In this document: positions 3,804 to 56,143 of the stretch, in pieces | Numbering within the stretch: position 1 is the first letter of the stretch | Layout: every line of letters begins with the position of its first letter | Virus record (IMG/VR): IMGVR_UViG_3300018891_000001 | Span: 151,871-215,870 of that record | DNA length: 64,000 nucleotides | Reading direction: 5' to 3' (one strand) | Notes under the pieces: generated by a model | What the model was told of the DNA's origin: nothing | The model's input: the letters and a program-made list of their open reading frames with translations, nothing else | The model's database searches: none | Translations under genes and position numbers: made by a program

Positions 3804-3920
3804 ATGGAAGTATTATTAGTGGCTGGAACCATTATGATTATGACCAACACTATGGTGCTGTTAATGTTAGCACCTACTATTTTAAAAGAGGTGAAGCATG
3901 GTGCCACTCGGAAATTTTAA
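3804..3920 (+). CDS. Small hydrophobic peptide
   Basis: GGAGG SD, MEVLLVAG...; coupled to the FtsK start. Confidence 0.45.
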   Translation: MEVLLVAGTIMIMTNTMVLLMLAPTILKEVKHGATRKF

Positions 3921-6204
3921 ACGACTCTTTCAACCTAGTTTAATTCAAAACGAAAAAGACGTATCTTATCATTTGCCTTCTTTATCACGAGCAGAAGCAA
4001 AAGCCCTTCTCTCCGCTCCCTTAGCGGGGGGAGGGGTCTTTGGCCTAGAAGCCCACCAAACAAAAGACCATGAAAGTCTTATTTTTTTTGCTCCGCCTTA
4101 CTATAAAGTGGAATGGAACCTCGCAGACCGAGACGCTGTTTTTGAAAATCTTGAAACCTATAAAAAACAAATCACCATCATGCAACTATATACGAGTAAA
4201 TCCTCATTGTTTCCTCTCTCCATTGAATATACTCAGTCTTTTTGGGAACAGGTTCGGCAATTTGCAGCTGATGATATCGGAATTATTTATCAAATTGTAC
4301 TTGCATACCGACAAGACCGATGGAAAGAACGAATCAAGGAGCAATATCAACTGTATCTAAGTGGAATCCAATCTCCCGCTGATCAAAAATGGGTACGCAG
4401 TATTCAAAATCGAATTAATCACTCCTTAGATCATCTCTTGCAATGGGAGTTCAAATATGCCCCTATTCCTGAAGTGGAACAGAAACTAAAAGAAAATGGA
4501 TTTCGATATAGTATTCGGCTCATTCTTTATGGCGGTAATCGAGCGAGGCGAAGAAAACTAATACATGAAATACAACAAATTTTACGAACCATGGAGTATA
4601 TCAATGAATGGAAAGTGAATACCTTTTTTGCGTTTGACGATATTATTCAGAATATCCAAAAACGCAAGCTCGATAATGTAGGAAAGCAACAAGTCTTATG
4701 TGTATCCGAATTGCTGCCATTTCTGATGTCCGAACATGTAGTGTACATTGAAAAACCGGCCATAAAAAAGGTAACAAAAACAAAGGTAAAAAATCCATTC
4801 GATCTCCTGCCGATAGGCAAGAAAATTCAACAAGTCGATGGGAGTCAAATAGCTCAAAAATTTGTTTACGCTCTCCAAGAGTTAAAGGTAATTAAAGAAG
4901 AAATTGTTGCTAAACGAGTTCAATGTGGGCCAATCATGATGAAAATCACCTTTGATTTACCGAAGGGGATGCGTCTTTCGGATATAACAAAGAAAAATAT
5001 GATTGAGGATATTCAGACTCATATGGGAGTCAAACATCTACAGATCTTACAAGGGGAGGATACGGGAGAATTCGATATTATGTTGCCACAAGAAAAAAGG
5101 CAAAAAATCTTTTTACGAGATTATGTGGATACCTCTGAATTTATGGAGTTTGCCGGACAACATCCACTTCCATTCTTTGTAGGGGTGGACGAAATAGGAC
5201 GCTCCATTTTTCGTTGTCTAAGTGAAATTCGTCATATTCTTGTAGCAGGAACAACCGGATCCGGCAAAAGCGTGTGGATGAATCAACTTATTCTTACCTT
5301 GTTATTAATTCGCAAACCCGATGAACTTCAATTTTATATGATTGATCTAAAACAAGTGGAACTCACCTGCTTTCAAGATTTCCCTCATGTGCGAGAAGTC
5401 ATCACAGATGCGAACAAAGCTATTCACCTACTTAGGAAAATCCAAAAAGAGATGGACAGACGTTATCAATTATTTAGTGAAACAGGAGTAAAAAACATTG
5501 CCTTGTATAATAGAAAACATCCTCATCAAAAGCTCCCTTATATTGTGTGCATTATTGATGAATATGCGGAATTAGCATTACGAACGGATAGTATACATGA
5601 ACTCGTTCAAAGTATGGCACAACTCGCAAGGGCTGCTGGCATCCACTTGATTATTGCAACCCAAGATCCACGAGTTGAAGTAATCCCAGGAATTATTAAG
5701 TCCAACATGCCGGGGAAAATCGGTTTCCGTTGCTCTAATGGAAACAGTTATCTAACATTTTTAAATACGAAACCACCTTTTAACCTATTAGGAAACGGGG
5801 ATGGGGTCATGAGCTTTGAGGGGCAAATAGAGGAGCATATTCGCTTTCAGGGATGTCTGATTATCGATGATCCCAAAAACGAAGGGCTTGAAAGTCAGTT
5901 GATTGCACAAATCGCAAGTCATATGGACGACTATGAAGGAGTAGATTTACCAGAATTAGAGGAAACAGAAGAAGTGCATATAGAAGAAACAGAGACAGAA
6001 ATAGACCGACTTAAACGCATTATTGCTCAAACAGGGGAAACAAGGGTATCACAACTAAGGGAAATGATGAAAATTAACATCAATCGATTGAATGATTTGA
6101 TGAGGGAACTCGCAGAAGAAGGGTGGCTGCAAAAGCCAGAATCCAAACAGCAAGGATACCAATTAATTGCACCAGAAGAGGAATTGGAAAAGTGGAGACA
6201 ATAA
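3898..6204 (+). CDS. FtsK/SpoIIIE-family DNA translocase
   Basis: HILVAGTTGSGKS, MIDLKQVEL, IIDEYAEL, ARAAGIHLIIATQ, LLGNGDG; C-terminal gamma-like winged helix. Confidence 0.92.
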   Translation: MVPLGNFKRLFQPSLIQNEKDVSYHLPSLSRAEAKALLSAPLAGGGVFGLEAHQTKDHESLIFFAPPYYKVEWNLADRDAVFENLETYKKQITIMQLYTSKSSLFPLSIEYTQSFWEQVRQFAADDIGIIYQIVLAYRQDRWKERIKEQYQLYLSGIQSPADQKWVRSIQNRINHSLDHLLQWEFKYAPIPEVEQKLKENGFRYSIRLILYGGNRARRRKLIHEIQQILRTMEYINEWKVNTFFAFDDIIQNIQKRKLDNVGKQQVLCVSELLPFLMSEHVVYIEKPAIKKVTKTKVKNPFDLLPIGKKIQQVDGSQIAQKFVYALQELKVIKEEIVAKRVQCGPIMMKITFDLPKGMRLSDITKKNMIEDIQTHMGVKHLQILQGEDTGEFDIMLPQEKRQKIFLRDYVDTSEFMEFAGQHPLPFFVGVDEIGRSIFRCLSEIRHILVAGTTGSGKSVWMNQLILTLLLIRKPDELQFYMIDLKQVELTCFQDFPHVREVITDANKAIHLLRKIQKEMDRRYQLFSETGVKNIALYNRKHPHQKLPYIVCIIDEYAELALRTDSIHELVQSMAQLARAAGIHLIIATQDPRVEVIPGIIKSNMPGKIGFRCSNGNSYLTFLNTKPPFNLLGNGDGVMSFEGQIEEHIRFQGCLIIDDPKNEGLESQLIAQIASHMDDYEGVDLPELEETEEVHIEETETEIDRLKRIIAQTGETRVSQLREMMKININRLNDLMRELAEEGWLQKPESKQQGYQLIAPEEELEKWRQ

Positions 6205-6366: not shown

Positions 6367-6395
6367 ATTATAATGCGTATTCCTTTCCCTGTCAA
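6367..6395 (-). promoter_or_regulatory. Consensus sigma-A promoter driving the antisense RNA
   Basis: TTGACA-GGGAAAGGAATACGCAT(17)-TATAAT. Confidence 0.85.
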
Positions 6396-45745: not shown

Positions 45746-46219
45746 TTATCCTTTTTTCGCTCCCTTAACGACGGGTACAATATGTTTTTTATCTTTATCA
45801 ATGGTCATTTCAGTGCGTTCACTAGAAAGTTCTGGGAAATCTCCTTCTAGAAATTCCCGTACTTCTTCTAATGTCATGTTATCTTTTGGAACAGGAATTT
45901 TGTGTCCTGCATAATACACTGTAAATTCTGCGCCAACCGTTTCTATTGTTTTTGCTTTAGATGTTGTTTTTTTGATTTCTGCTTTTGTTTCTTTTTTCTC
46001 TTTTTTACTTGATGATGATTTTTCAGTCTTTTTTGTGGAAACTGGTTGTATATCCCCAAACAAGTCCAATTGTTGATCTTCTTCAGGAACTTCAATATCA
46101 TCATCAATGTCATCTAAATCAGGAGCTTTGGTTTCTTGTGATTCATCCTCCGGCTCTGTTTGATATACCTGGATGTTTTGGTTTTGTTGTTCTTGTTCTT
46201 TTTCAAATTCCATGTTCAT
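45746..46219 (-). CDS. Prokaryotic ubiquitin-like protein (PRTRC protein C-like) with acidic disordered N-terminus
   Basis: MTLEEVREFL...FPEL....; C-terminal GAKKG; adjacent to E2 and E1. Confidence 0.65.
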   Translation of the reverse strand: MNMEFEKEQEQQNQNIQVYQTEPEDESQETKAPDLDDIDDDIEVPEEDQQLDLFGDIQPVSTKKTEKSSSSKKEKKETKAEIKKTTSKAKTIETVGAEFTVYYAGHKIPVPKDNMTLEEVREFLEGDFPELSSERTEMTIDKDKKHIVPVVKGAKKG

Positions 46220-46241
46220 AGTAATACCTCCTAATGATTTA

Positions 46242-46925
46242 CTAATTTATAATTGACTCTGCCCATTCGTGAAAAGTCAAATTCTGAGGGGCAGGACGTA
46301 AAATACTGTAATCAAAAGGTTTTCCTTGTGATTCCTCAAGCAATTGTCGAAGTGGCTTACTGGTTAAATTTACTTGTCTCGGAAAATACAAGTGATCATT
46401 AAATGGCGTATGAAGCCATCGGTGTGGAAAGGTCTGTAGCTGAACTAAATCTTTAACAGTTTCATCACTGTAATAGCACATACGACCATTTTCGTATACG
46501 TTGGAATACGGATAGCGATAAAGCTTAGTATCATCTCGTAAAAAACGGTCTTTGTAAGCAAACACTTGGCGATTAGAAACTCGCTGATTTTTTACCGCAA
46601 AGAAAAACACCAAATTAGGAAACGGAACGTCTTGAAACACGCTTTGATGGTATTGAACAGTCGCTGTTGTTTCCGGATACGAAAGAAATACTAAATGGGA
46701 TTCATCGCTTTTCTTTGCATATTTGACAGTATTTAGAGGCAATGATGGACTAATTAAAATCGGTTTTGCCGGTTCCTCTTTTGGTTCATTGTAATCCTCT
46801 ACCAATGAAGATAATAAAAGTTCTGCTAATTGCTGCAAAGTAAGATGTAACGTTCTTTGTATTCCATTTTCCTCAAGCTCTACTTTAGCTAATTCCAGAT
46901 TATCAAGTGTAATCACTGCTTTCAT
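46242..46925 (-). CDS. Prokaryotic E2 (family D, PRTRC protein B-like)
   Basis: VPFPNLVF; LYRYPYSNVY.NGRMC (candidate catalytic Cys); PFNDHL. Confidence 0.75.
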   Translation of the reverse strand: MKAVITLDNLELAKVELEENGIQRTLHLTLQQLAELLLSSLVEDYNEPKEEPAKPILISPSLPLNTVKYAKKSDESHLVFLSYPETTATVQYHQSVFQDVPFPNLVFFFAVKNQRVSNRQVFAYKDRFLRDDTKLYRYPYSNVYENGRMCYYSDETVKDLVQLQTFPHRWLHTPFNDHLYFPRQVNLTSKPLRQLLEESQGKPFDYSILRPAPQNLTFHEWAESIIN

Positions 46926-47425
46926 AATAATCCCTCCTGCATAGAGGATGATAATGATTCTTGAGTGTTTTGTGTGGCTTTTTGAATATCCTGTTGAATT
47001 TGACTTAAAGCCATCCATAAATTTGACAACAAGCTCGAAAACATAGGGGTGCTATAATATTCAATCGTAAAATATCCGTCTTCTTGCCAATCCCCTTCAA
47101 AATCTTCGTAGTATAAACCTGAAGTTTGAACAGCATTTTTTATGGTTTCTTTTACTTGGGAAACCAGTATTTCTGGTATCATAGTCCAATCAAATAGAAA
47201 AGCAATTTCATAACAATGAGGGGTATCTGGTTCGTTTTTTGCTCGGAAAAAACGAAAACGATGTTCTAATCGTGTGATCGCCCGAAGAAAAAAGTCTTCA
47301 CCATTAATGCTTTGGTGTTTATCTGTTATATAATCTTCTCCAAGGTCATATAGAAATTTCATCATCATGACAACATCAATGGTTTCTGCAATTTCGTATC
47401 GTTCTTCTTCATAAAGAAGACTCAA
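46922..47425 (-). CDS. Hypothetical protein within the E1/E2 cassette
   Basis: Overlapping start and stop codons. Confidence 0.55.
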   Translation of the reverse strand: MSLLYEEERYEIAETIDVVMMMKFLYDLGEDYITDKHQSINGEDFFLRAITRLEHRFRFFRAKNEPDTPHCYEIAFLFDWTMIPEILVSQVKETIKNAVQTSGLYYEDFEGDWQEDGYFTIEYYSTPMFSSLLSNLWMALSQIQQDIQKATQNTQESLSSSMQEGLL

Positions 47426-47763
47426 AAGAATGCAACCTCCCTTCTTACGGTAGGCATCTGGCCTAAGTATTGAATAATATCTTCAATCTGAAACGATTGA
47501 ACCCCAATATGATCCCAATCCTCGTCATAAGCTCCTGCTTCATAGGAAGGCCAATACATCACCATATCTAATATCCATTCCAATTCTTCCTGGGTAACAG
47601 ATTGAAGAAATTCATCTGTAATGTTTTCCCTCCTCATGATTTCTCGGTACAATCGGAGTATGCGATAATTGATTTTACGCTCTTGATCTGAATAACGATT
47701 ATTAGCCGACTGTAAAGATTCCATAAATCTAGAAAAATCAAACCGCTTTTGCTTGTTTTTCAT
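47422..47763 (-). CDS. Hypothetical protein within the E1/E2 cassette
   Basis: Overlapping start and stop codons. Confidence 0.55.
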   Translation of the reverse strand: MKNKQKRFDFSRFMESLQSANNRYSDQERKINYRILRLYREIMRRENITDEFLQSVTQEELEWILDMVMYWPSYEAGAYDEDWDHIGVQSFQIEDIIQYLGQMPTVRREVAFF

Positions 47764-48601
47764 CTGAAGACCACCTCATCATTTGTTGCTCCTCAATATA
47801 CATAGGACGCATTAACATGGTTTGAGCATTGAAATTAACATAGTGTGACATAATCATGGATTCAGACAAAAGCATATTCAAATAACTCATCATTACAAGT
47901 GCAGCAGTTTCATTGGTTTGCATGCGCTGCGGATAATACAAAACTTGTTCTCCACATGCTTGCGTAGGCAAACGAGAATCGGTGTCTTCTAAAATATCCG
48001 GATATACCATTCCTACAGGTTCCAAAATTAATTGAGAATACCATTTGAATCCACATACAACTTGACCGGAGTATCCCATCTTCCGCTGAACCGAAGGAAT
48101 TTCCTCTGGGTTCACGGAGTCAATTCCACTATCGATATAAACAATGGTTGACATTTTTTCAAATAGTTGATGCATAATTTGACGGGTAGCATTATTATCC
48201 ACACACCCCAATAAAACAGGAATGTCCACATAAAAATGGGAACGATGATAAGAAAATAAATCCTGCAATTCCTTTACCTGTTCGATATAAGAAGCCCGAT
48301 AATGGATCGGGATTCCATATGCATTACTGTAACGATTGGCTAACACTTCTACTTTAGGAAGTCCTATATCTTGCTCAATAAAAGGCTGACGGTATACATT
48401 TTTCGGTTCTACCTGATCTCCGTCTACAATGACATAGCGATATGAAAATAATTCATTTTGCTGTGATAAGCTATACAATAATTTGGAAAGGCGTTGCAAT
48501 AAGTAACCTCCATTTCCACCTGTGCCAATTTGAATAATCTCAAAATGAAAATATTTATTTTGAGCAATGCGATCCCGCAATGAAATAACAGGTCGATGCA
48601 T
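47738..48601 (-). CDS. ThiF/E1-like adenylyltransferase (PRTRC type)
   Basis: IGTGGNGG, VDGD.VE.KN..RQ, K...LA, GCVDN..TR, QACG. Confidence 0.88.
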   Translation of the reverse strand: MHRPVISLRDRIAQNKYFHFEIIQIGTGGNGGYLLQRLSKLLYSLSQQNELFSYRYVIVDGDQVEPKNVYRQPFIEQDIGLPKVEVLANRYSNAYGIPIHYRASYIEQVKELQDLFSYHRSHFYVDIPVLLGCVDNNATRQIMHQLFEKMSTIVYIDSGIDSVNPEEIPSVQRKMGYSGQVVCGFKWYSQLILEPVGMVYPDILEDTDSRLPTQACGEQVLYYPQRMQTNETAALVMMSYLNMLLSESMIMSHYVNFNAQTMLMRPMYIEEQQMMRWSSDEKQAKAV

Positions 48602-48613
48602 CCCCTTACCTCC

Positions 48614-49261
48614 TCAGTTGGTTTTCCGATGTGTCTCCCCTTTTCTCTTTCGAATAACAGTTAAGCGTCGTTGAGTTCCTTTTTCTGGACGACCTAATCG
48701 ACGTGCAATCTCACGATAATTCATACCACTTTGCCACCAAAACCAAGCTGCTTCATCTTCCTCCTGTGTCCAATTCGTAGGACGTTTTACCTGTTTTGCT
48801 TTTGTGATTTCTTCATCTAGCCATTTTGGTTCTGGGAGAATGATTCCTCGTTTGATATGTGCAAAATTTACTCGTTCTTTATGTAATTCGATCCATTTCC
48901 ATAAATCATAGGGATCAATGAAATAACGATATCGCTTATCTGATTTTGTTACTTTATGTAATTGTTTGGCTTTTAGACCAAAATGGCAAATCCATTGAAT
49001 CACGGTGCGATGATTGACACCAAGAGCTTCTGCTACTTGTGGAGGAGATAAAAGACCACCTGCAAGATTCATATCTTGAAATCCCATTAATTCTTTATAC
49101 TTTTGATGGATGGCCTCTTTACTGCGTTTTAAATGTCTTATAAGATAGCTCATACTTTTTATTCCATATGATTCCAATAAAAACTCTTTATCCTTATCGC
49201 TCCATATCCTTTTCTGATTGAGATAAGAATGTTTCTTTGACTGCTGCAAGAGATTCACCAA
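48614..49261 (-). CDS. Multi-HTH (Myb-like repeat) DNA-binding protein
   Basis: WSDKDKEFL, VAEALGVNHRTV, WTQEED...YREIARRLGR. Confidence 0.7.
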   Translation of the reverse strand: MVNLLQQSKKHSYLNQKRIWSDKDKEFLLESYGIKSMSYLIRHLKRSKEAIHQKYKELMGFQDMNLAGGLLSPPQVAEALGVNHRTVIQWICHFGLKAKQLHKVTKSDKRYRYFIDPYDLWKWIELHKERVNFAHIKRGIILPEPKWLDEEITKAKQVKRPTNWTQEEDEAAWFWWQSGMNYREIARRLGRPEKGTQRRLTVIRKRKGETHRKTN

Positions 49262-51858: not shown

Positions 51859-52377
51859 TTATTTTGTTTTCACTATATAAGCAACTGTTCCATCATCGAG
51901 AGGTTGTGACACAACAATCTTTCTTGGATCCAAACCTGCTTGAGCGGCATGAGCTTTTCGAAGTTCTTCTTCTAATTGATCAATTTTTTGATAAAGTAAT
52001 TCCTTATCCCTCTTGAGTTGCTCAATTTGTGCCTCTTTGGTTTTTAATATCGTTTCAAAGCGATTTGCACTTGAACTCAATTCATCAATCATCTTAAAAA
52101 TCTCATGCACTTGCTTGTCCGGATCCGGAATCCCATAATATACGATTTCATTGGATTCCGATTTCTCTACAGATGGAACAATGCCTATGACCCCCTGTTT
52201 ACGTAATTTTTTCACAGCACGATGAACTGTGGCTTCACTGAGTCCCAATTTTTCACCGATTTGCTTCATAGGCTCCCGTATTGGGCCCTCTTTCCTTTCG
52301 GTTTGTTCTTTAATATACTGGTAAACCTGAATTTCACTTTGACTCAGAATTTCCAATACCTGTTCTTCTGTCAACAT
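51859..52377 (-). CDS. Winged-HTH regulator with coiled coil
   Basis: MKQIGEKLGLSEATVHRAVKKLRKQGVI. Confidence 0.8.
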   Translation of the reverse strand: MLTEEQVLEILSQSEIQVYQYIKEQTERKEGPIREPMKQIGEKLGLSEATVHRAVKKLRKQGVIGIVPSVEKSESNEIVYYGIPDPDKQVHEIFKMIDELSSSANRFETILKTKEAQIEQLKRDKELLYQKIDQLEEELRKAHAAQAGLDPRKIVVSQPLDDGTVAYIVKTK

Positions 52378-52399
52378 CCTTGATACAACCCCTTTTCTC

Positions 52400-52760
52400 T
52401 TTGTAATACATTACACATTATGAGTGATTATCTAGTAATATACCTCATTTAAAAATAATTTAAACATAATGCATTACAGTTTATCAAGGATTTTCGACAA
52501 TTAGGTATATTTTACTTTAAATTCCTTTAAAATCCTGCGATTTATAGGACTTTATTCCTGCCTACTTGTTTAAATATACCCTTTTCAGCAATAAGTGTCA
52601 ATATTTCAAGGATAAACTATATTTCGCAAATTTCGACGTTAATCGACAGAACGTATGTTCCCATCAACTGTTCTGGTATTAATATACTCTGTTCGGTAAT
52701 AAGTGTCAATAGTTTGATAGCCTATCATATTTCGCAAATTTCGACATTCACCGACAAAAT
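52400..52760 (-). promoter_or_regulatory. Complex control region: duplicated sigma-A promoters, LexA box, Spo0A boxes, two operators
   Basis: TTGACA-N17-TATATT at 52573-52601 and 52681-52709; GAACGTATGTTC at 52649-60; TGTCGAA at 52493-99 and 52740-46. Confidence 0.75.
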
Positions 52761-52790
52761 TTATGATAAATTTGGTATTAGAGGCATATT

Positions 52791-53072
52791 TTAGAAACAG
52801 GATAAATCGATTTCTTGTTGTTTCTTGCGACGACGCTCTGTGCGACGACGTTCTTTTTCACGCTCAACAGCATCTATATCCACTACACCAATGCCACGTA
52901 TACGAGCAATTTCCATAATCTCATCAATATTATAGACACGATAGTTATTTCTCGGATTGCGTCGAGCTGGGGGAATTAGATGATTTTCCTCCCAATACAT
53001 GATGGTATCTCGGTGAACAGCTAGCATGAGTGCTGCTTGATTTAGTGTGTAATCCTGTTTGTATTCCTTCAT
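52791..53072 (-). CDS. MerR-type HTH protein
   Basis: AA.ML.VH.DTI.YWE...LIP..R...NYRVY. Confidence 0.8.
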   Translation of the reverse strand: MKEYKQDYTLNQAALMLAVHRDTIMYWEENHLIPPARRNPRNNYRVYNIDEIMEIARIRGIGVVDIDAVEREKERRRTERRRKKQQEIDLSCF

Positions 53073-55390: not shown

Positions 55391-56143
55391 TTAAGCTCCT
55401 TGTGGTGGGGCTGGCGGAAATCCGCCATTTGGTGCACCTACTGGAGCTCCATAACCGCCACCTGGTGGGTTAGGTGGAAATCCTCCTTGCGGAGCAGGAG
55501 GTGTATTTGATTGCGCCGGATTTGGCGGGAATCCTCCTCCTTGTGGTGGAGCCGGAGGTGGTGTAAATCCTCCCTGTTGCTGTTGTGGAGATGGATTGAA
55601 ATTACCTTGTGGCGGTGCTTGGAATCCACCTTGATACTGTCCTGTTGGTTGTTGTTGTGCTCCTTCACTGCCTTTTGGCATTTCTAATCCTACAAGCTCA
55701 GTAACTTTAATAGTTGGATAATAACTATAAGAACCATCTTGATTCTTTTGTTGGCGAAGTTCAGGGATTCCTTCTACGAACACTCGACGACCTTTCGGAC
55801 AATGATTAATCAAGAAATTATATTTACTATCGGCTCCTTCGTTGCCCCATACTTCAATAAACCAAAAATCAGTTCCTGCTTTTTCGCTACGATGATTAAT
55901 TGCGATCTTAGATGTACCCACTTTTGAATTGTTTACTATTTTTGAAGTTGGATCCTGGGTTAAACGTCCAATGACTTTGATTTTGGCATAATTATCAAAT
56001 CCAGAGCCATTACGTTGACCATTAGATTGCTGATCCATCGGATAGCCGCCTTGATTTGGATACCCTTGATTTGAGTACCCTTGATTTCCATAAGACTGAT
56101 TTCCATAAGACTGATTTCCATAAGGTTGACCGTAGTTATTCAT
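55391..56143 (-). CDS. ssb: Single-stranded DNA-binding protein with low-complexity tails
   Basis: IGRLTQDP, TDFW.IEVWG, KG..V.VEG OB-fold. Confidence 0.85.
   Translation of the reverse strand: MNNYGQPYGNQSYGNQSYGNQGYSNQGYPNQGGYPMDQQSNGQRNGSGFDNYAKIKVIGRLTQDPTSKIVNNSKVGTSKIAINHRSEKAGTDFWFIEVWGNEGADSKYNFLINHCPKGRRVFVEGIPELRQQKNQDGSYSYYPTIKVTELVGLEMPKGSEGAQQQPTGQYQGGFQAPPQGNFNPSPQQQQGGFTPPPAPPQGGGFPPNPAQSNTPPAPQGGFPPNPPGGGYGAPVGAPNGGFPPAPPQGA

What the first reader, a model, noticed from the sequence alone, without database searches (positions are those of the whole stretch)
52400..52760. Regulator promoter that may integrate SOS and sporulation signals
Seen: a duplicated block (108-bp offset), each copy with TTGACA-N17-TATATT and upstream TGTCGAA/CGTCGAA plus TTGCGAA. 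A canonical Bacillus LexA box GAAC-GTAT-GTTC lies between the promoters, and another TGTCGAA at 52493. Established: TGNCGAA is the Spo0A box and GAAC-N4-GTTC the Cheo box. Inference: the element's lifestyle switch reads both DNA damage and Spo0A~P.
Basis: partly seen in the sequence, partly recalled or inferred. Interest (0 to 1): 0.62.

Follow-up and report, generated by a model that had tools for sequence, protein, structure and literature searches.

The report
Spo0A-box promoters of a jumbo-phage regulator
A 216-kb Bacillus-type jumbo phage drives the gene of its likely genome-wide regulator from two duplicated strong host-type promoters, each preceded by a conserved array of sites that look exactly like binding sites for the host sporulation master regulator Spo0A, so the phage probably reads the host's decision to sporulate; the DNA-damage (LexA) site is real in the sequence but is found only in this one phage.

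Summary
The window is the right end of a complete 215,870-bp phage genome from a biocrust metagenome.

**Spo0A boxes: supported.**
- Twelve related phage lineages share a perfect TGTCGAA, a free 3-bp spacer and a second TGTCGnn.
- The first box starts exactly 27 or 47 bp before a consensus sigma-A promoter.
- The boxes are as conserved as the -35 hexamer, while the flanks are near random.
- Only this phage carries the module twice.

**LexA box: weak.** It is the only GAAC-N4-GTTC in the genome. It is absent from all relatives, lacks the outer C/G, and lies in a diverged segment between the two modules.

**New findings.**
- The gene's proximal promoter sits between two copies of GTAATGCATTAC. 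This palindrome occurs 23 times in the genome, mostly just after -10 boxes of unrelated operons, and is enriched in every relative checked.
- The long leader is predicted to hide the start codon.
- The phage has no integrase, S24 repressor or partition genes, yet relatives are deposited as roughly 200-kb Bacillus plasmids.

Verdict: a phi29-like Spo0A-gated early promoter in a new architecture. Dual SOS and sporulation sensing is not shown.

The parts
52791..53072 (-). MerR-like small HTH gene directly upstream; no terminator-like site found after it
   Evidence: Pfam MerR_1 at E 3.4e-8. It sits next to the wHTH gene in close relatives and nearby in distant ones. No minus-strand terminator was found.
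52661..52768 (-). Promoter module A, the upstream copy of the 108-bp duplication
   Evidence: Repeat families D1 and D2, offset 108 bp.
52730..52756 (-). Box array A: TGTCGGT, 3 bp, TGTCGAA, 3 bp, TGCGAAA. The first box starts 47 bp before the -35.
   Evidence: Relatives L039, L005, L008 and L021 have the same 47-bp geometry.
52681..52709 (-). Distal promoter P_A: TTGACA-N17-TATATT. The transcription start is inferred near 52674.
52649..52660 (.). Cheo-type palindrome GAACGTATGTTC. It lies about +15 to +26 from the inferred P_A start and directly abuts box array B.
   Evidence: Unique in the window and in the genome. Absent from relatives.
52553..52660 (-). Promoter module B, the downstream copy of the duplication
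52622..52648 (-). Box array B: TGTCGAT, 3 bp, CGTCGAA, 3 bp, TGCGAAA. The first box starts 47 bp before the -35.
52573..52601 (-). Distal promoter P_B: TTGACA-N17-TATATT. The transcription start is inferred near 52566.
52493..52499 (-). Single perfect TGTCGAA in the leader
   Evidence: A TGNCGAA box occurs in the leader of 4 of the 11 relatives (L002, L005, L008, L021), at variable distance.
52482..52491 (-). Leader segment ATCCTTGATA, complementary to the start-codon region 52376-52385
   Evidence: Inverted repeat I3. Duplex energy -17.6 kcal/mol against -5.5 for shuffles. Structure predictions.
52466..52477 (.). Operator O1, one mismatch from GTAATGCATTAC, just upstream of the -35 of the proximal promoter and ending 2 bp before it
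52437..52464 (-). Proximal promoter P3: TTTAAA-N16-TATATT
   Evidence: The -10 columns are invariant across 12 lineages.
52403..52414 (.). Operator O2, GTAATACATTAC, downstream of the P3 -10
51859..52377 (-). 172-aa protein: winged helix, long coiled coil and a small C-terminal beta domain. It is a candidate phage-wide regulator.
   Evidence: Pfam HTH_24. AlphaFold2 pLDDT 82.6. Homologues. PHROG 8102 at E 5.5e-25.

Best explanation
The 413-bp spacer between the MerR-like gene and the 172-aa winged-helix gene is a composite control region of a jumbo phage that infects endospore formers.

**Shown by sequence and comparison**
- There are two tandem copies of a strong host sigma-A promoter module, P_A and P_B.
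- Each module carries an upstream array of direct repeats that follow the rule for a Spo0A~P dimer site: 7-bp boxes with a 3-bp spacer. The arrays keep a fixed helical phase to the -35.
- A leader of about 190 nt follows.
- A weak proximal promoter, P3, sits between two copies of a palindrome that marks about 20 other promoters of the phage.

**Inferred**
- Host Spo0A~P binds the arrays and gates the distal promoters when the host commits to sporulation. Repression is the more likely direction, because the promoters already match consensus and the geometry resembles the Spo0A-repressed A2b promoter of phi29.
- This would couple the regulator gene and the co-directional downstream genes (the first with a recognisable family is a Holliday junction resolvase) to the host's sporulation state, and so favour arrest of the phage and its carriage in the spore.
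- P3 is feedback-controlled through the palindromes, either by the winged-helix protein itself or by the adjacent MerR-like protein.
- The LexA box is a feature of this lineage only. It could let LexA block P_A transcripts or compete with Spo0A at array B. It is equally well explained as a chance palindrome.
For: **Synteny and shared layout**
- SSB, RecA, UDG, MerR, spacer and winged-helix gene keep the same order in relatives.
- All 12 lineages have TGTCGAA, 3 bp, then TGTCGnn upstream of TTGACA-N17-TATACT or TATATT.

**Phase and conservation**
- The first box starts 27 bp (26 bp in L043) or 47 bp before the -35, a step of exactly two helical turns.
- Mean pairwise identity in the 27-bp class: box 1 100%, spacer 36%, box 2 82%, -35 94%, flanks 28-47%. 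The 47-bp class gives the same picture.
- Within this phage the two module copies keep the boxes (27 of 30 positions) and both hexamers perfectly, while the spacers have diverged.
- The tandem arrangement occurs nowhere else in an intergenic spacer in the 216-kb genome.

**Fit to Spo0A**
- Spo0A~P dimers bind two 0A boxes 3 bp apart. In phi29 a consensus box 26 bp upstream of the A2b -35 represses that early promoter (PMC2731898).
- Hosts of named relatives are Bacillus, Priestia, Paenibacillus and Alicyclobacillus, all endospore formers.
- The phage encodes no Spo0A_C domain of its own.

**The palindrome network**
- 23 sites with at most one mismatch, 11 of them perfect, 18 intergenic.
- Most lie just after a -10 box and 10-40 nt before the ribosome-binding site.
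- They precede the genes for portal, virion protein, ribonucleotide reductase, dUTPase, clamp and nucleases.
- The palindrome is enriched in every relative genome checked, with 3 to 11 perfect sites against 0 to 2 for the reversed control.
Against: - No binding or expression data exist. The only sequencing runs that hold this phage are DNA runs from biocrust metagenomes.
- The host of this particular phage is unknown.
- TGTCGAA is not enriched genome-wide, so Spo0A would act only at this locus.
- The box position, about -46 to -83, does not match the best-studied activated or repressed host promoters, so the direction of control is a guess.
- A phage-encoded protein, or another host protein, that reads direct repeats could bind the same array.
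- PHROGs labels the 172-aa protein a replication initiation protein.
- The third box in this phage, TGCGAAA, is a poor 0A box.
Confidence: 0.6

Rival explanations
1. One reading: the region integrates both LexA (DNA damage) and Spo0A~P (sporulation) inputs. LexA sits on the box between the promoters and is removed during the SOS response.
For: - The box is the only GAAC-N4-GTTC in 216 kb and falls inside the one spacer that holds two of the genome's three consensus promoters. The chance of an exact site in this 413-bp spacer is about 0.005 (0.74 per 64 kb).
- It lies about +15 to +26 from the inferred P_A start and directly abuts box array B.
- Precedents: a single LexA site verified by surface plasmon resonance controls an operon in the 235-kb Bacillus phage-plasmid pBtic235 (PMC9700832). 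GIL01 uses host LexA as its repressor.
- A phage RecA gene lies two genes upstream.
Against: - The box is not conserved. None of the 11 relatives has an exact box in the spacer. The single 1-mismatch site, in L043, matches the chance expectation of about one.
- Cheo boxes in relatives lie inside a small ORF about 9 kb away.
- The outer bases are A and C instead of C and G, so 8 of 10 consensus positions match.
- The equivalent segment of copy A is 7 of 12 identical and is not a Cheo box, so the box lies in the fast-diverging part of the module.
- P_B and P3 would escape LexA.
- The site was selected after the fact, because it caught the eye.
Confidence: 0.22
2. The direct-repeat arrays are functional, but a protein other than Spo0A binds them. 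Candidates are a phage-encoded HTH protein, such as the 215-aa HTH_23 protein at 48614-49261, or another host regulator.
For: - Conservation shows that a protein binds, not which one.
- The arrays occur only at this locus, as expected for a dedicated phage factor.
- Box 2 drifts to AGTCGAA and box 3 to AGTCTAA in the subtilis-group phages.
Against: - Box 1 is the exact published 0A consensus in 9 of 13 modules, and the 7+3+7 head-to-tail rule is the one described for Spo0A dimers.
- The motif stays the same across phages of different Bacillus species, as expected for a conserved host factor.
- No response-regulator-like Spo0A_C domain is encoded by the phage.
Confidence: 0.15
3. The spacer is a replication origin and the 172-aa protein is its initiator. 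The palindromes act as initiator sites flanking an AT-rich unwinding region, the strong promoters provide transcriptional activation, and the 0A boxes block replication as at phi29 origins.
For: - PHROG 8102 'replication initiation protein' at E 5.5e-25, and O-like phrog_678.
- Protein-atlas leads to DnaD_N/HTH_36 phage proteins, scores 0.81-0.85.
- The neighbours are SSB, RecA, UDG and a Holliday junction resolvase.
- The stretch between O1 and O2 is AT-rich.
- Spo0A is known to block replication initiation at origins.
Against: - The palindrome is scattered over 23 sites, mostly just downstream of -10 boxes of unrelated operons. That is the pattern of a transcription factor, not of an origin.
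- The protein covers only positions 28-209 of the 337-position PHROG profile.
- The Foldseek search of solved structures returns only generic winged-helix regulators.
- The atlas scores are below the level its own guidance calls more than a lead.
Confidence: 0.1

Closest known systems
Spo0A control of the early promoters A2c and A2b of Bacillus phages phi29 and Nf (PMC2731898)
   Same: Strong sigma-A early phage promoters carry a consensus TGTCGAA plus a second, imperfect box 3 bp away. In phi29 the consensus box lies 26 bp upstream of the A2b -35. The phage has no lysogeny genes, and its host forms spores.
   Different: - 216-kb jumbo phage against a 19-kb phage.
- The boxes occur at one locus only, not at several promoters and the genome ends.
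- The arrays are phase-locked at 27 or 47 bp and lie wholly upstream of the core promoter.
- No good parS-like sites were found: the best has 2 mismatches.
- Binding has not been tested.
LexA-controlled switches of Bacillus thuringiensis phages GIL01 and pBtic235 (PMC4551915, PMC9700832)
   Same: A host LexA box lies in a promoter region of an extrachromosomal Bacillus phage. pBtic235 is a jumbo element with a single verified LexA site.
   Different: - The box here lies downstream of one of three promoters.
- It lacks the outer C/G and is not conserved in relatives.
- No gp7-like corepressor was looked for.
Dispersed C1 operators of the plasmid prophage P1 (own knowledge, not tested here)
   Same: One phage regulator motif is scattered over about 20 promoters of a large phage whose relatives live as plasmids. 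The regulator gene carries the motif at its own promoter.
   Different: - The motif here is a perfect 12-bp palindrome, whereas P1 operators are asymmetric.
- The binding protein is not identified and there is no sequence similarity.
- Repression has not been shown.
Tandem Pv/Ps promoters of the host spo0A gene, with 0A boxes between them (PMC12090719)
   Same: Two tandem promoters of a master-regulator gene carry 0A boxes that can repress the upstream promoter and modulate the downstream one.
   Different: Both distal promoters here are sigma-A type and are duplicates. Each has its own array upstream of it rather than between the promoters.

Membership tests
Spo0A-binding site (tandem 0A boxes) | A 7-bp box matching TGTCGAA | tested here: met
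   Perfect at 52746-52740 and 52499-52493, and 6 of 7 at 52648-52642 and 52638-52632. Box 1 is perfect in 9 of 13 modules across lineages.
Spo0A-binding site (tandem 0A boxes) | Two boxes in direct repeat separated by 3 bp, forming a dimer site | tested here: met
   The 7+3+7 arrangement is present in all 13 modules. The spacer sequence is free at 31-36% identity. The rule is taken from PMC2731898.
Spo0A-binding site (tandem 0A boxes) | A fixed position relative to a promoter | tested here: met
   The first box starts 27 bp (26 bp in L043) or 47 bp before the -35 in all modules.
Spo0A-binding site (tandem 0A boxes) | The host encodes Spo0A | tested here: inconclusive
   The host of this metagenomic phage is unknown. 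All named hosts of relatives are endospore-forming Bacillales.
Spo0A-binding site (tandem 0A boxes) | Binding by Spo0A~P and a response to spo0A alleles | not testable with these tools
   This needs footprinting and reporter assays. No RNA runs hold the phage.
LexA operator (Cheo box) | GAAC-N4-GTTC palindrome | tested here: met
   52649-52660, unique in the genome.
LexA operator (Cheo box) | Full consensus CGAAC-N4-GTTCG | tested here: not met
   The flanking bases are A and C, so 8 of 10 defined positions match. The consensus is as quoted in PMC9700832.
LexA operator (Cheo box) | Overlap with the core promoter or transcription start of the controlled gene | tested here: inconclusive
   The box lies about +15 to +26 from the inferred P_A start and about 48 bp upstream of the P_B -35. 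The starts are inferred, not mapped.
LexA operator (Cheo box) | Conservation at the orthologous promoter | tested here: not met
   There is no exact box in the 11 relatives, and one 1-mismatch site where about one is expected by chance. Cheo boxes of relatives lie inside an ORF elsewhere.
Sigma-A promoter | -35 and -10 hexamers with a 17-bp spacer, conserved in relatives | tested here: met
   11 of 12 consensus positions in both copies. The -35 is 94-100% conserved across lineages. The transcription start is not mapped.
Temperate lifestyle switch (CI/Cro-like module) | Integrase, an autocleavable repressor or partition genes in the genome | tested here: not met
   No PF00589, PF00239, PF00717, PF02195 or PF13614 in the complete genome. 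Relatives nevertheless occur as plasmids.
Phage replication initiator (PHROG 8102 / O-like) | Clustered initiator sites at one origin | tested here: not met
   The candidate sites are dispersed at 23 places, mostly next to promoters.

The most novel reading that the evidence does not exclude
The region is the decision point of an episomal jumbo phage and is built from promoter interference plus a translational lock.

- The winged-helix protein is a P1-C1-like global repressor, made only from the short P3 transcript.
- The strong distal promoters produce long transcripts in which the leader hides the regulator's start codon.
- Those long transcripts run over O1, P3 and O2, silence repressor synthesis and express downstream lytic genes.
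- Spo0A~P, and LexA in this lineage, hold the distal promoters down. Sporulation therefore locks the phage into dormancy inside the spore, and DNA damage releases it.
Probability: 0.15. Interest if true: 0.8.

Novelty: new variant of a known kind. Interest (0 to 1): 0.58.

Why it matters
**Breadth of Spo0A sensing by phages.** Direct reading of host Spo0A by a phage has been shown only for the small phi29 family. A conserved, phase-locked 0A-box array at the strongest host-type promoter of a whole clade of roughly 200-kb Bacillus phages would show that sensing sporulation is a general strategy. Relatives in this clade sit as 'plasmids' in food and soil strains of B. licheniformis, B. halotolerans and B. 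thuringiensis.

**A testable entry point.** Nothing is known about gene regulation in these jumbo elements. The region offers a handful of short motifs, a candidate regulator and about 20 candidate target promoters to test.

**Practical relevance.** It bears on how large phages persist in spores of industrial and biocontrol Bacillus strains.

Tried and rejected
**Searches for close relatives**
- Near-identity DNA search in the phage collection: no match.
- Protein search in that collection: only a weak hit to ORF230 of phage 0305phi8-36, whose upstream spacer is only about 80 bp, too short for this promoter region.
- Exact 19-mer and single-protein scans of viral contigs: nothing.
- The look-up of P0025 (Priestia megaterium) failed.

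**Enrichment and RNA evidence**
- Genome-wide enrichment of 0A boxes or Cheo boxes is rejected.
- parS-like Spo0J sites, as in phi29: the best match has 2 mismatches, so they are not supported.
- Known RNA families in the spacer: none.
- RNAalifold gave a CCTT:AAGG pairing (leader to ribosome-binding site) plus O1:O2 pairing, with no compensatory pairs. Formal covariation for the leader helix is therefore not established. Only cognate-versus-shuffled duplex energies and accessibility differences support it.
- No RNA run holds the phage, so transcription starts could not be mapped and read laying was not used.

**Identity of the 172-aa protein**
- The Foldseek search of solved structures gave only generic winged-helix hits, such as the CodY C-terminal domain and MarR.
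- The search of solved structures by sequence profile gave nothing specific.
- NCBIfam hits were all far below the family cut-offs.

**Ideas considered and set aside**
- The palindrome as a CcpA cre site: it resembles cre except for a central GC instead of CG. It is also enriched on the phage and its relatives far beyond the reversed control. The first point rests on my own knowledge of cre.
- Separating the winged-helix protein from the MerR-like protein as binder of the palindrome, by their co-occurrence: this failed, because both genes stay near each other even in distant relatives.

Full report
**Context**

The window is the last 64 kb of a complete 215,870-bp virus record with direct terminal repeats and 37% G+C. 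The only sequencing runs that hold it are DNA runs from biocrust metagenomes.

From about 7.8 kb to the window's end, all large ORFs lie on the minus strand. The finding lies in the 413-bp spacer at 52378-52790. Upstream is a MerR-like gene (52791-53072). Downstream is a 172-aa winged-helix gene (51859-52377). The wider neighbourhood holds SSB, RecA, a UDG-family protein and a Holliday junction resolvase.

On the minus strand there are two copies of a block of about 100 bp, 108 bp apart.
- Each copy carries TTGACA-N17-TATATT.
- Each copy carries an identical 19-mer that holds the GTCGAA and GCGAA motifs.
- GAACGTATGTTC lies at 52649-52660, and a further TGTCGAA at 52499-52493.

Simple counts are not significant.
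- TGNCGAA: 30 found, 31 expected in the window.
- TGTCGAA: 19 found, 29.6 expected in the genome.
- GAAC-N4-GTTC: 1 found, about 2.5 expected in the genome.

Two facts do stand out. The Cheo core is the only one in 216 kb. Two of the genome's three perfect sigma-A promoters are in this spacer.

**Relatives**

The 172-aa protein has 36 homologues at 49-72% identity. Some lie on contigs of 140-225 kb from Bacillus subtilis-group, B. velezensis and Priestia assemblies.

Protein search of the plasmid collection finds it on records of 200-212 kb. These are deposited as plasmids of B. licheniformis, B. paralicheniformis and B. halotolerans. It also occurs on 140-260 kb plasmids of B. cereus and B. 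thuringiensis, and in Paenibacillus.

Gene order is conserved: SSB, an unknown gene, RecA, UDG, MerR, spacer, winged-helix gene. I collected the spacer from 12 distinct lineages.

**The Spo0A-type arrays**

Every lineage has a perfect or near-perfect TGTCGAA, three free bases, then TGTCGnn, upstream of TTGACA-N17-TATACT or TATATT. Some lineages have a third box after three more bases.

The first box starts 27 bp before the -35 in seven lineages (26 bp in L043). It starts 47 bp before the -35 in four further lineages and in both copies here. The two classes differ by exactly two helical turns.

| Segment (27-bp class) | Mean pairwise identity |
|---|---|
| Box 1 | 100% |
| 3-bp spacer | 36% |
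| Box 2 | 82% |
| -35 hexamer | 94% |
| Neighbouring segments | 28-47% |

The 47-bp class gives the same picture: 87% for box 1, 31% for the spacer, 80% for box 2 and 100% for the -35.

Within this phage the two copies keep the array (27 of 30 positions), the -35 plus six further bases, and the -10 unchanged. The linkers have drifted to near-random. Both copies therefore appear to be under selection.

The 7+3+7 head-to-tail arrangement is the one described for Spo0A~P dimers. In phi29 a consensus box 26 bp upstream of the A2b -35 represses that early promoter (PMC2731898). The phage encodes no Spo0A_C domain of its own. All named hosts of relatives form endospores.

I conclude that the arrays are real protein-binding sites (about 0.85) and that Spo0A~P is the most likely binder (about 0.65). 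The direction of control is an inference. I favour repression, because the promoters already match consensus and the geometry resembles phi29 A2b.

**The LexA box**

No relative has an exact box in the spacer. One 1-mismatch site overlaps the -35 in L043. About one such site is expected by chance in the 12 spacers, given 124 strand hits with at most one mismatch in 216 kb.

Exact CGAAC-N4-GTTC sites in pSCDB14, the B. halotolerans plasmid and one IMG/VR relative lie about 9 kb away. They fall in the reading frame of a small ORF.

The site here matches 8 of the 10 defined consensus positions. It occupies the first 12 bases of module B, where module A is only 7 of 12 identical. It lies about +15 to +26 from the inferred P_A start and directly abuts the first box of array B.

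A functional single LexA site in a jumbo Bacillus phage-plasmid has a precedent in pBtic235 (PMC9700832). The chance of an exact site in this spacer is about 0.005. The site was, however, picked after the fact. I put its function at about 0.25.

**What else is in the spacer**

*Proximal promoter and operators.* The most conserved part is a proximal promoter, TTTAAA-N16-TATATT at 52464-52437. It is flanked by two near-copies of GTAATGCATTAC: O1 at 52466-52477 and O2 at 52403-52414.

*A genome-wide palindrome.*
- It occurs 23 times in the genome with at most one mismatch, 11 times perfectly, and 18 sites are intergenic.
- Most sites lie immediately after a -10 box, often TGTTATAAT, and 10-40 nt before a ribosome-binding site.
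- The genes that follow include portal, a virion protein, ribonucleotide reductase, dUTPase, a polymerase processivity factor and nucleases.
- It is enriched in every relative checked, with 3 to 11 perfect sites against 0 to 2 for the reversed control. This holds even in elements whose regulator is only 40-49% identical and in an Alicyclobacillus element.
- Distant relatives also keep it upstream of the regulator gene.

The winged-helix protein is therefore best read as a phage-wide transcription factor that also controls its own proximal promoter. The adjacent MerR-like protein is co-conserved as well and remains an alternative binder.

*The protein itself.* The AlphaFold2 model shows a winged helix, a 60-residue coiled coil and a small beta domain, with pLDDT 82.6. 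The Foldseek search of solved structures finds only generic winged-helix regulators. PHROGs calls it a replication initiation protein. The dispersed, promoter-proximal sites argue against an origin-binding role.

*A possible translational lock.* A leader segment just upstream of O1 (52482-52491) is complementary to the start-codon region.
- Three or four different sequence versions of this complementarity occur among the lineages.
- Cognate duplexes beat shuffles at p of 0.01 or less in 9 of 12 lineages.
- The start codon is predicted to be less accessible in the long transcript than in the P3 transcript: mean unpaired probability 0.23 against 0.49, Wilcoxon p 0.006, lineages not independent.
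- The leader of this phage folds with z = -3.2.
- RNAalifold finds no compensatory pairs, so this remains suggestive only.

**Lifestyle**

The complete genome has no tyrosine or serine recombinase, S24 peptidase, ParA, ParB or sigma region-2 domain. A classical lysogeny switch is therefore not supported.

Relatives nevertheless persist as roughly 200-kb extrachromosomal records in cultured Bacillus strains, and two IMG/VR relatives are classed as proviruses. Some carrier or episomal state is likely in the family.

**Verdict**

- The Spo0A reading is supported by comparative evidence and resembles the phi29 paradigm in a new, larger architecture.
- The LexA reading is specific to this lineage and unproven.
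- 'Integration of both signals' is possible but has low probability.

Noticed in passing
G000 genome-wide. In the window: 2069, 15848, 17253, 22955, 26013, 42633, 45413, 52403, 52466: The 12-bp palindrome GTAATGCATTAC occurs 23 times with at most one mismatch. Most sites lie right after -10 boxes of unrelated operons. It is enriched in all relatives checked, which points to a clade-wide regulon.
   Followed up: yes
window 52482-52491 and 52376-52385: A leader segment is complementary to the start-codon region of the regulator gene. Other lineages keep the complementarity with different sequences. The predicted effect is that only long transcripts hide the start codon.
   Followed up: partly
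window 45746-48601 (minus strand): A ThiF/E1-like gene, a Prok-E2_D gene and a weak Prok_Ub-like gene form a ubiquitin-like conjugation cluster in the phage. It is conserved in relatives (ThiF and Prok-E2_D in L005 and L008).
   Followed up: no
L043:1-790: The RecA gene of one relative is 750 aa long and carries an intein with a LAGLIDADG endonuclease domain.
   Followed up: no
window 6367-6395 (minus strand): This is the third consensus sigma-A promoter of the genome, TTGACA-N17-TATAAT. It lies in a spacer between plus-strand ORFs, about 1 kb from the strand-switch region, and points towards the plus-strand ORF at 3898-6204.
   Followed up: no
L005:2830-2885, L008, L021 and L058 (leader of the subtilis-group relatives): Five tandem 7+3 repeats (TGAAGAA, TGAAGAA, TGAAGAT, TGACTAA, TGACGAA) lie downstream of the distal promoter. 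They may be a degenerate 0A-box array acting as a roadblock.
   Followed up: no
window 52510-52545 (minus strand): Three 10-bp-phased A/T-tract repeats (AGGATTTTAA, AGGAATTTAA, AGTAAAATAT) lie in the leader and may give intrinsic DNA curvature.
   Followed up: no
window 55391-56143 (minus strand): The SSB gene has long low-complexity N- and C-terminal tails rich in Q, G, N and P around the OB fold.
   Followed up: no
PLSDB records NZ_CP014843.1, NZ_CP114067.1 and others: Relatives of this phage are deposited as non-mobilizable 'plasmids' of 200-212 kb, typed rep_cluster_1042, in B. licheniformis, B. paralicheniformis and B. halotolerans. No paper on them was found.
   Followed up: partly
L040, L041, L043, L044, just upstream of box 1: TGTAAT-like half-sites (TGTAATC, about 7 nt, then TGTAAATG) precede the box array in the 27-bp class. 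They may be a weak third operator.
   Followed up: no
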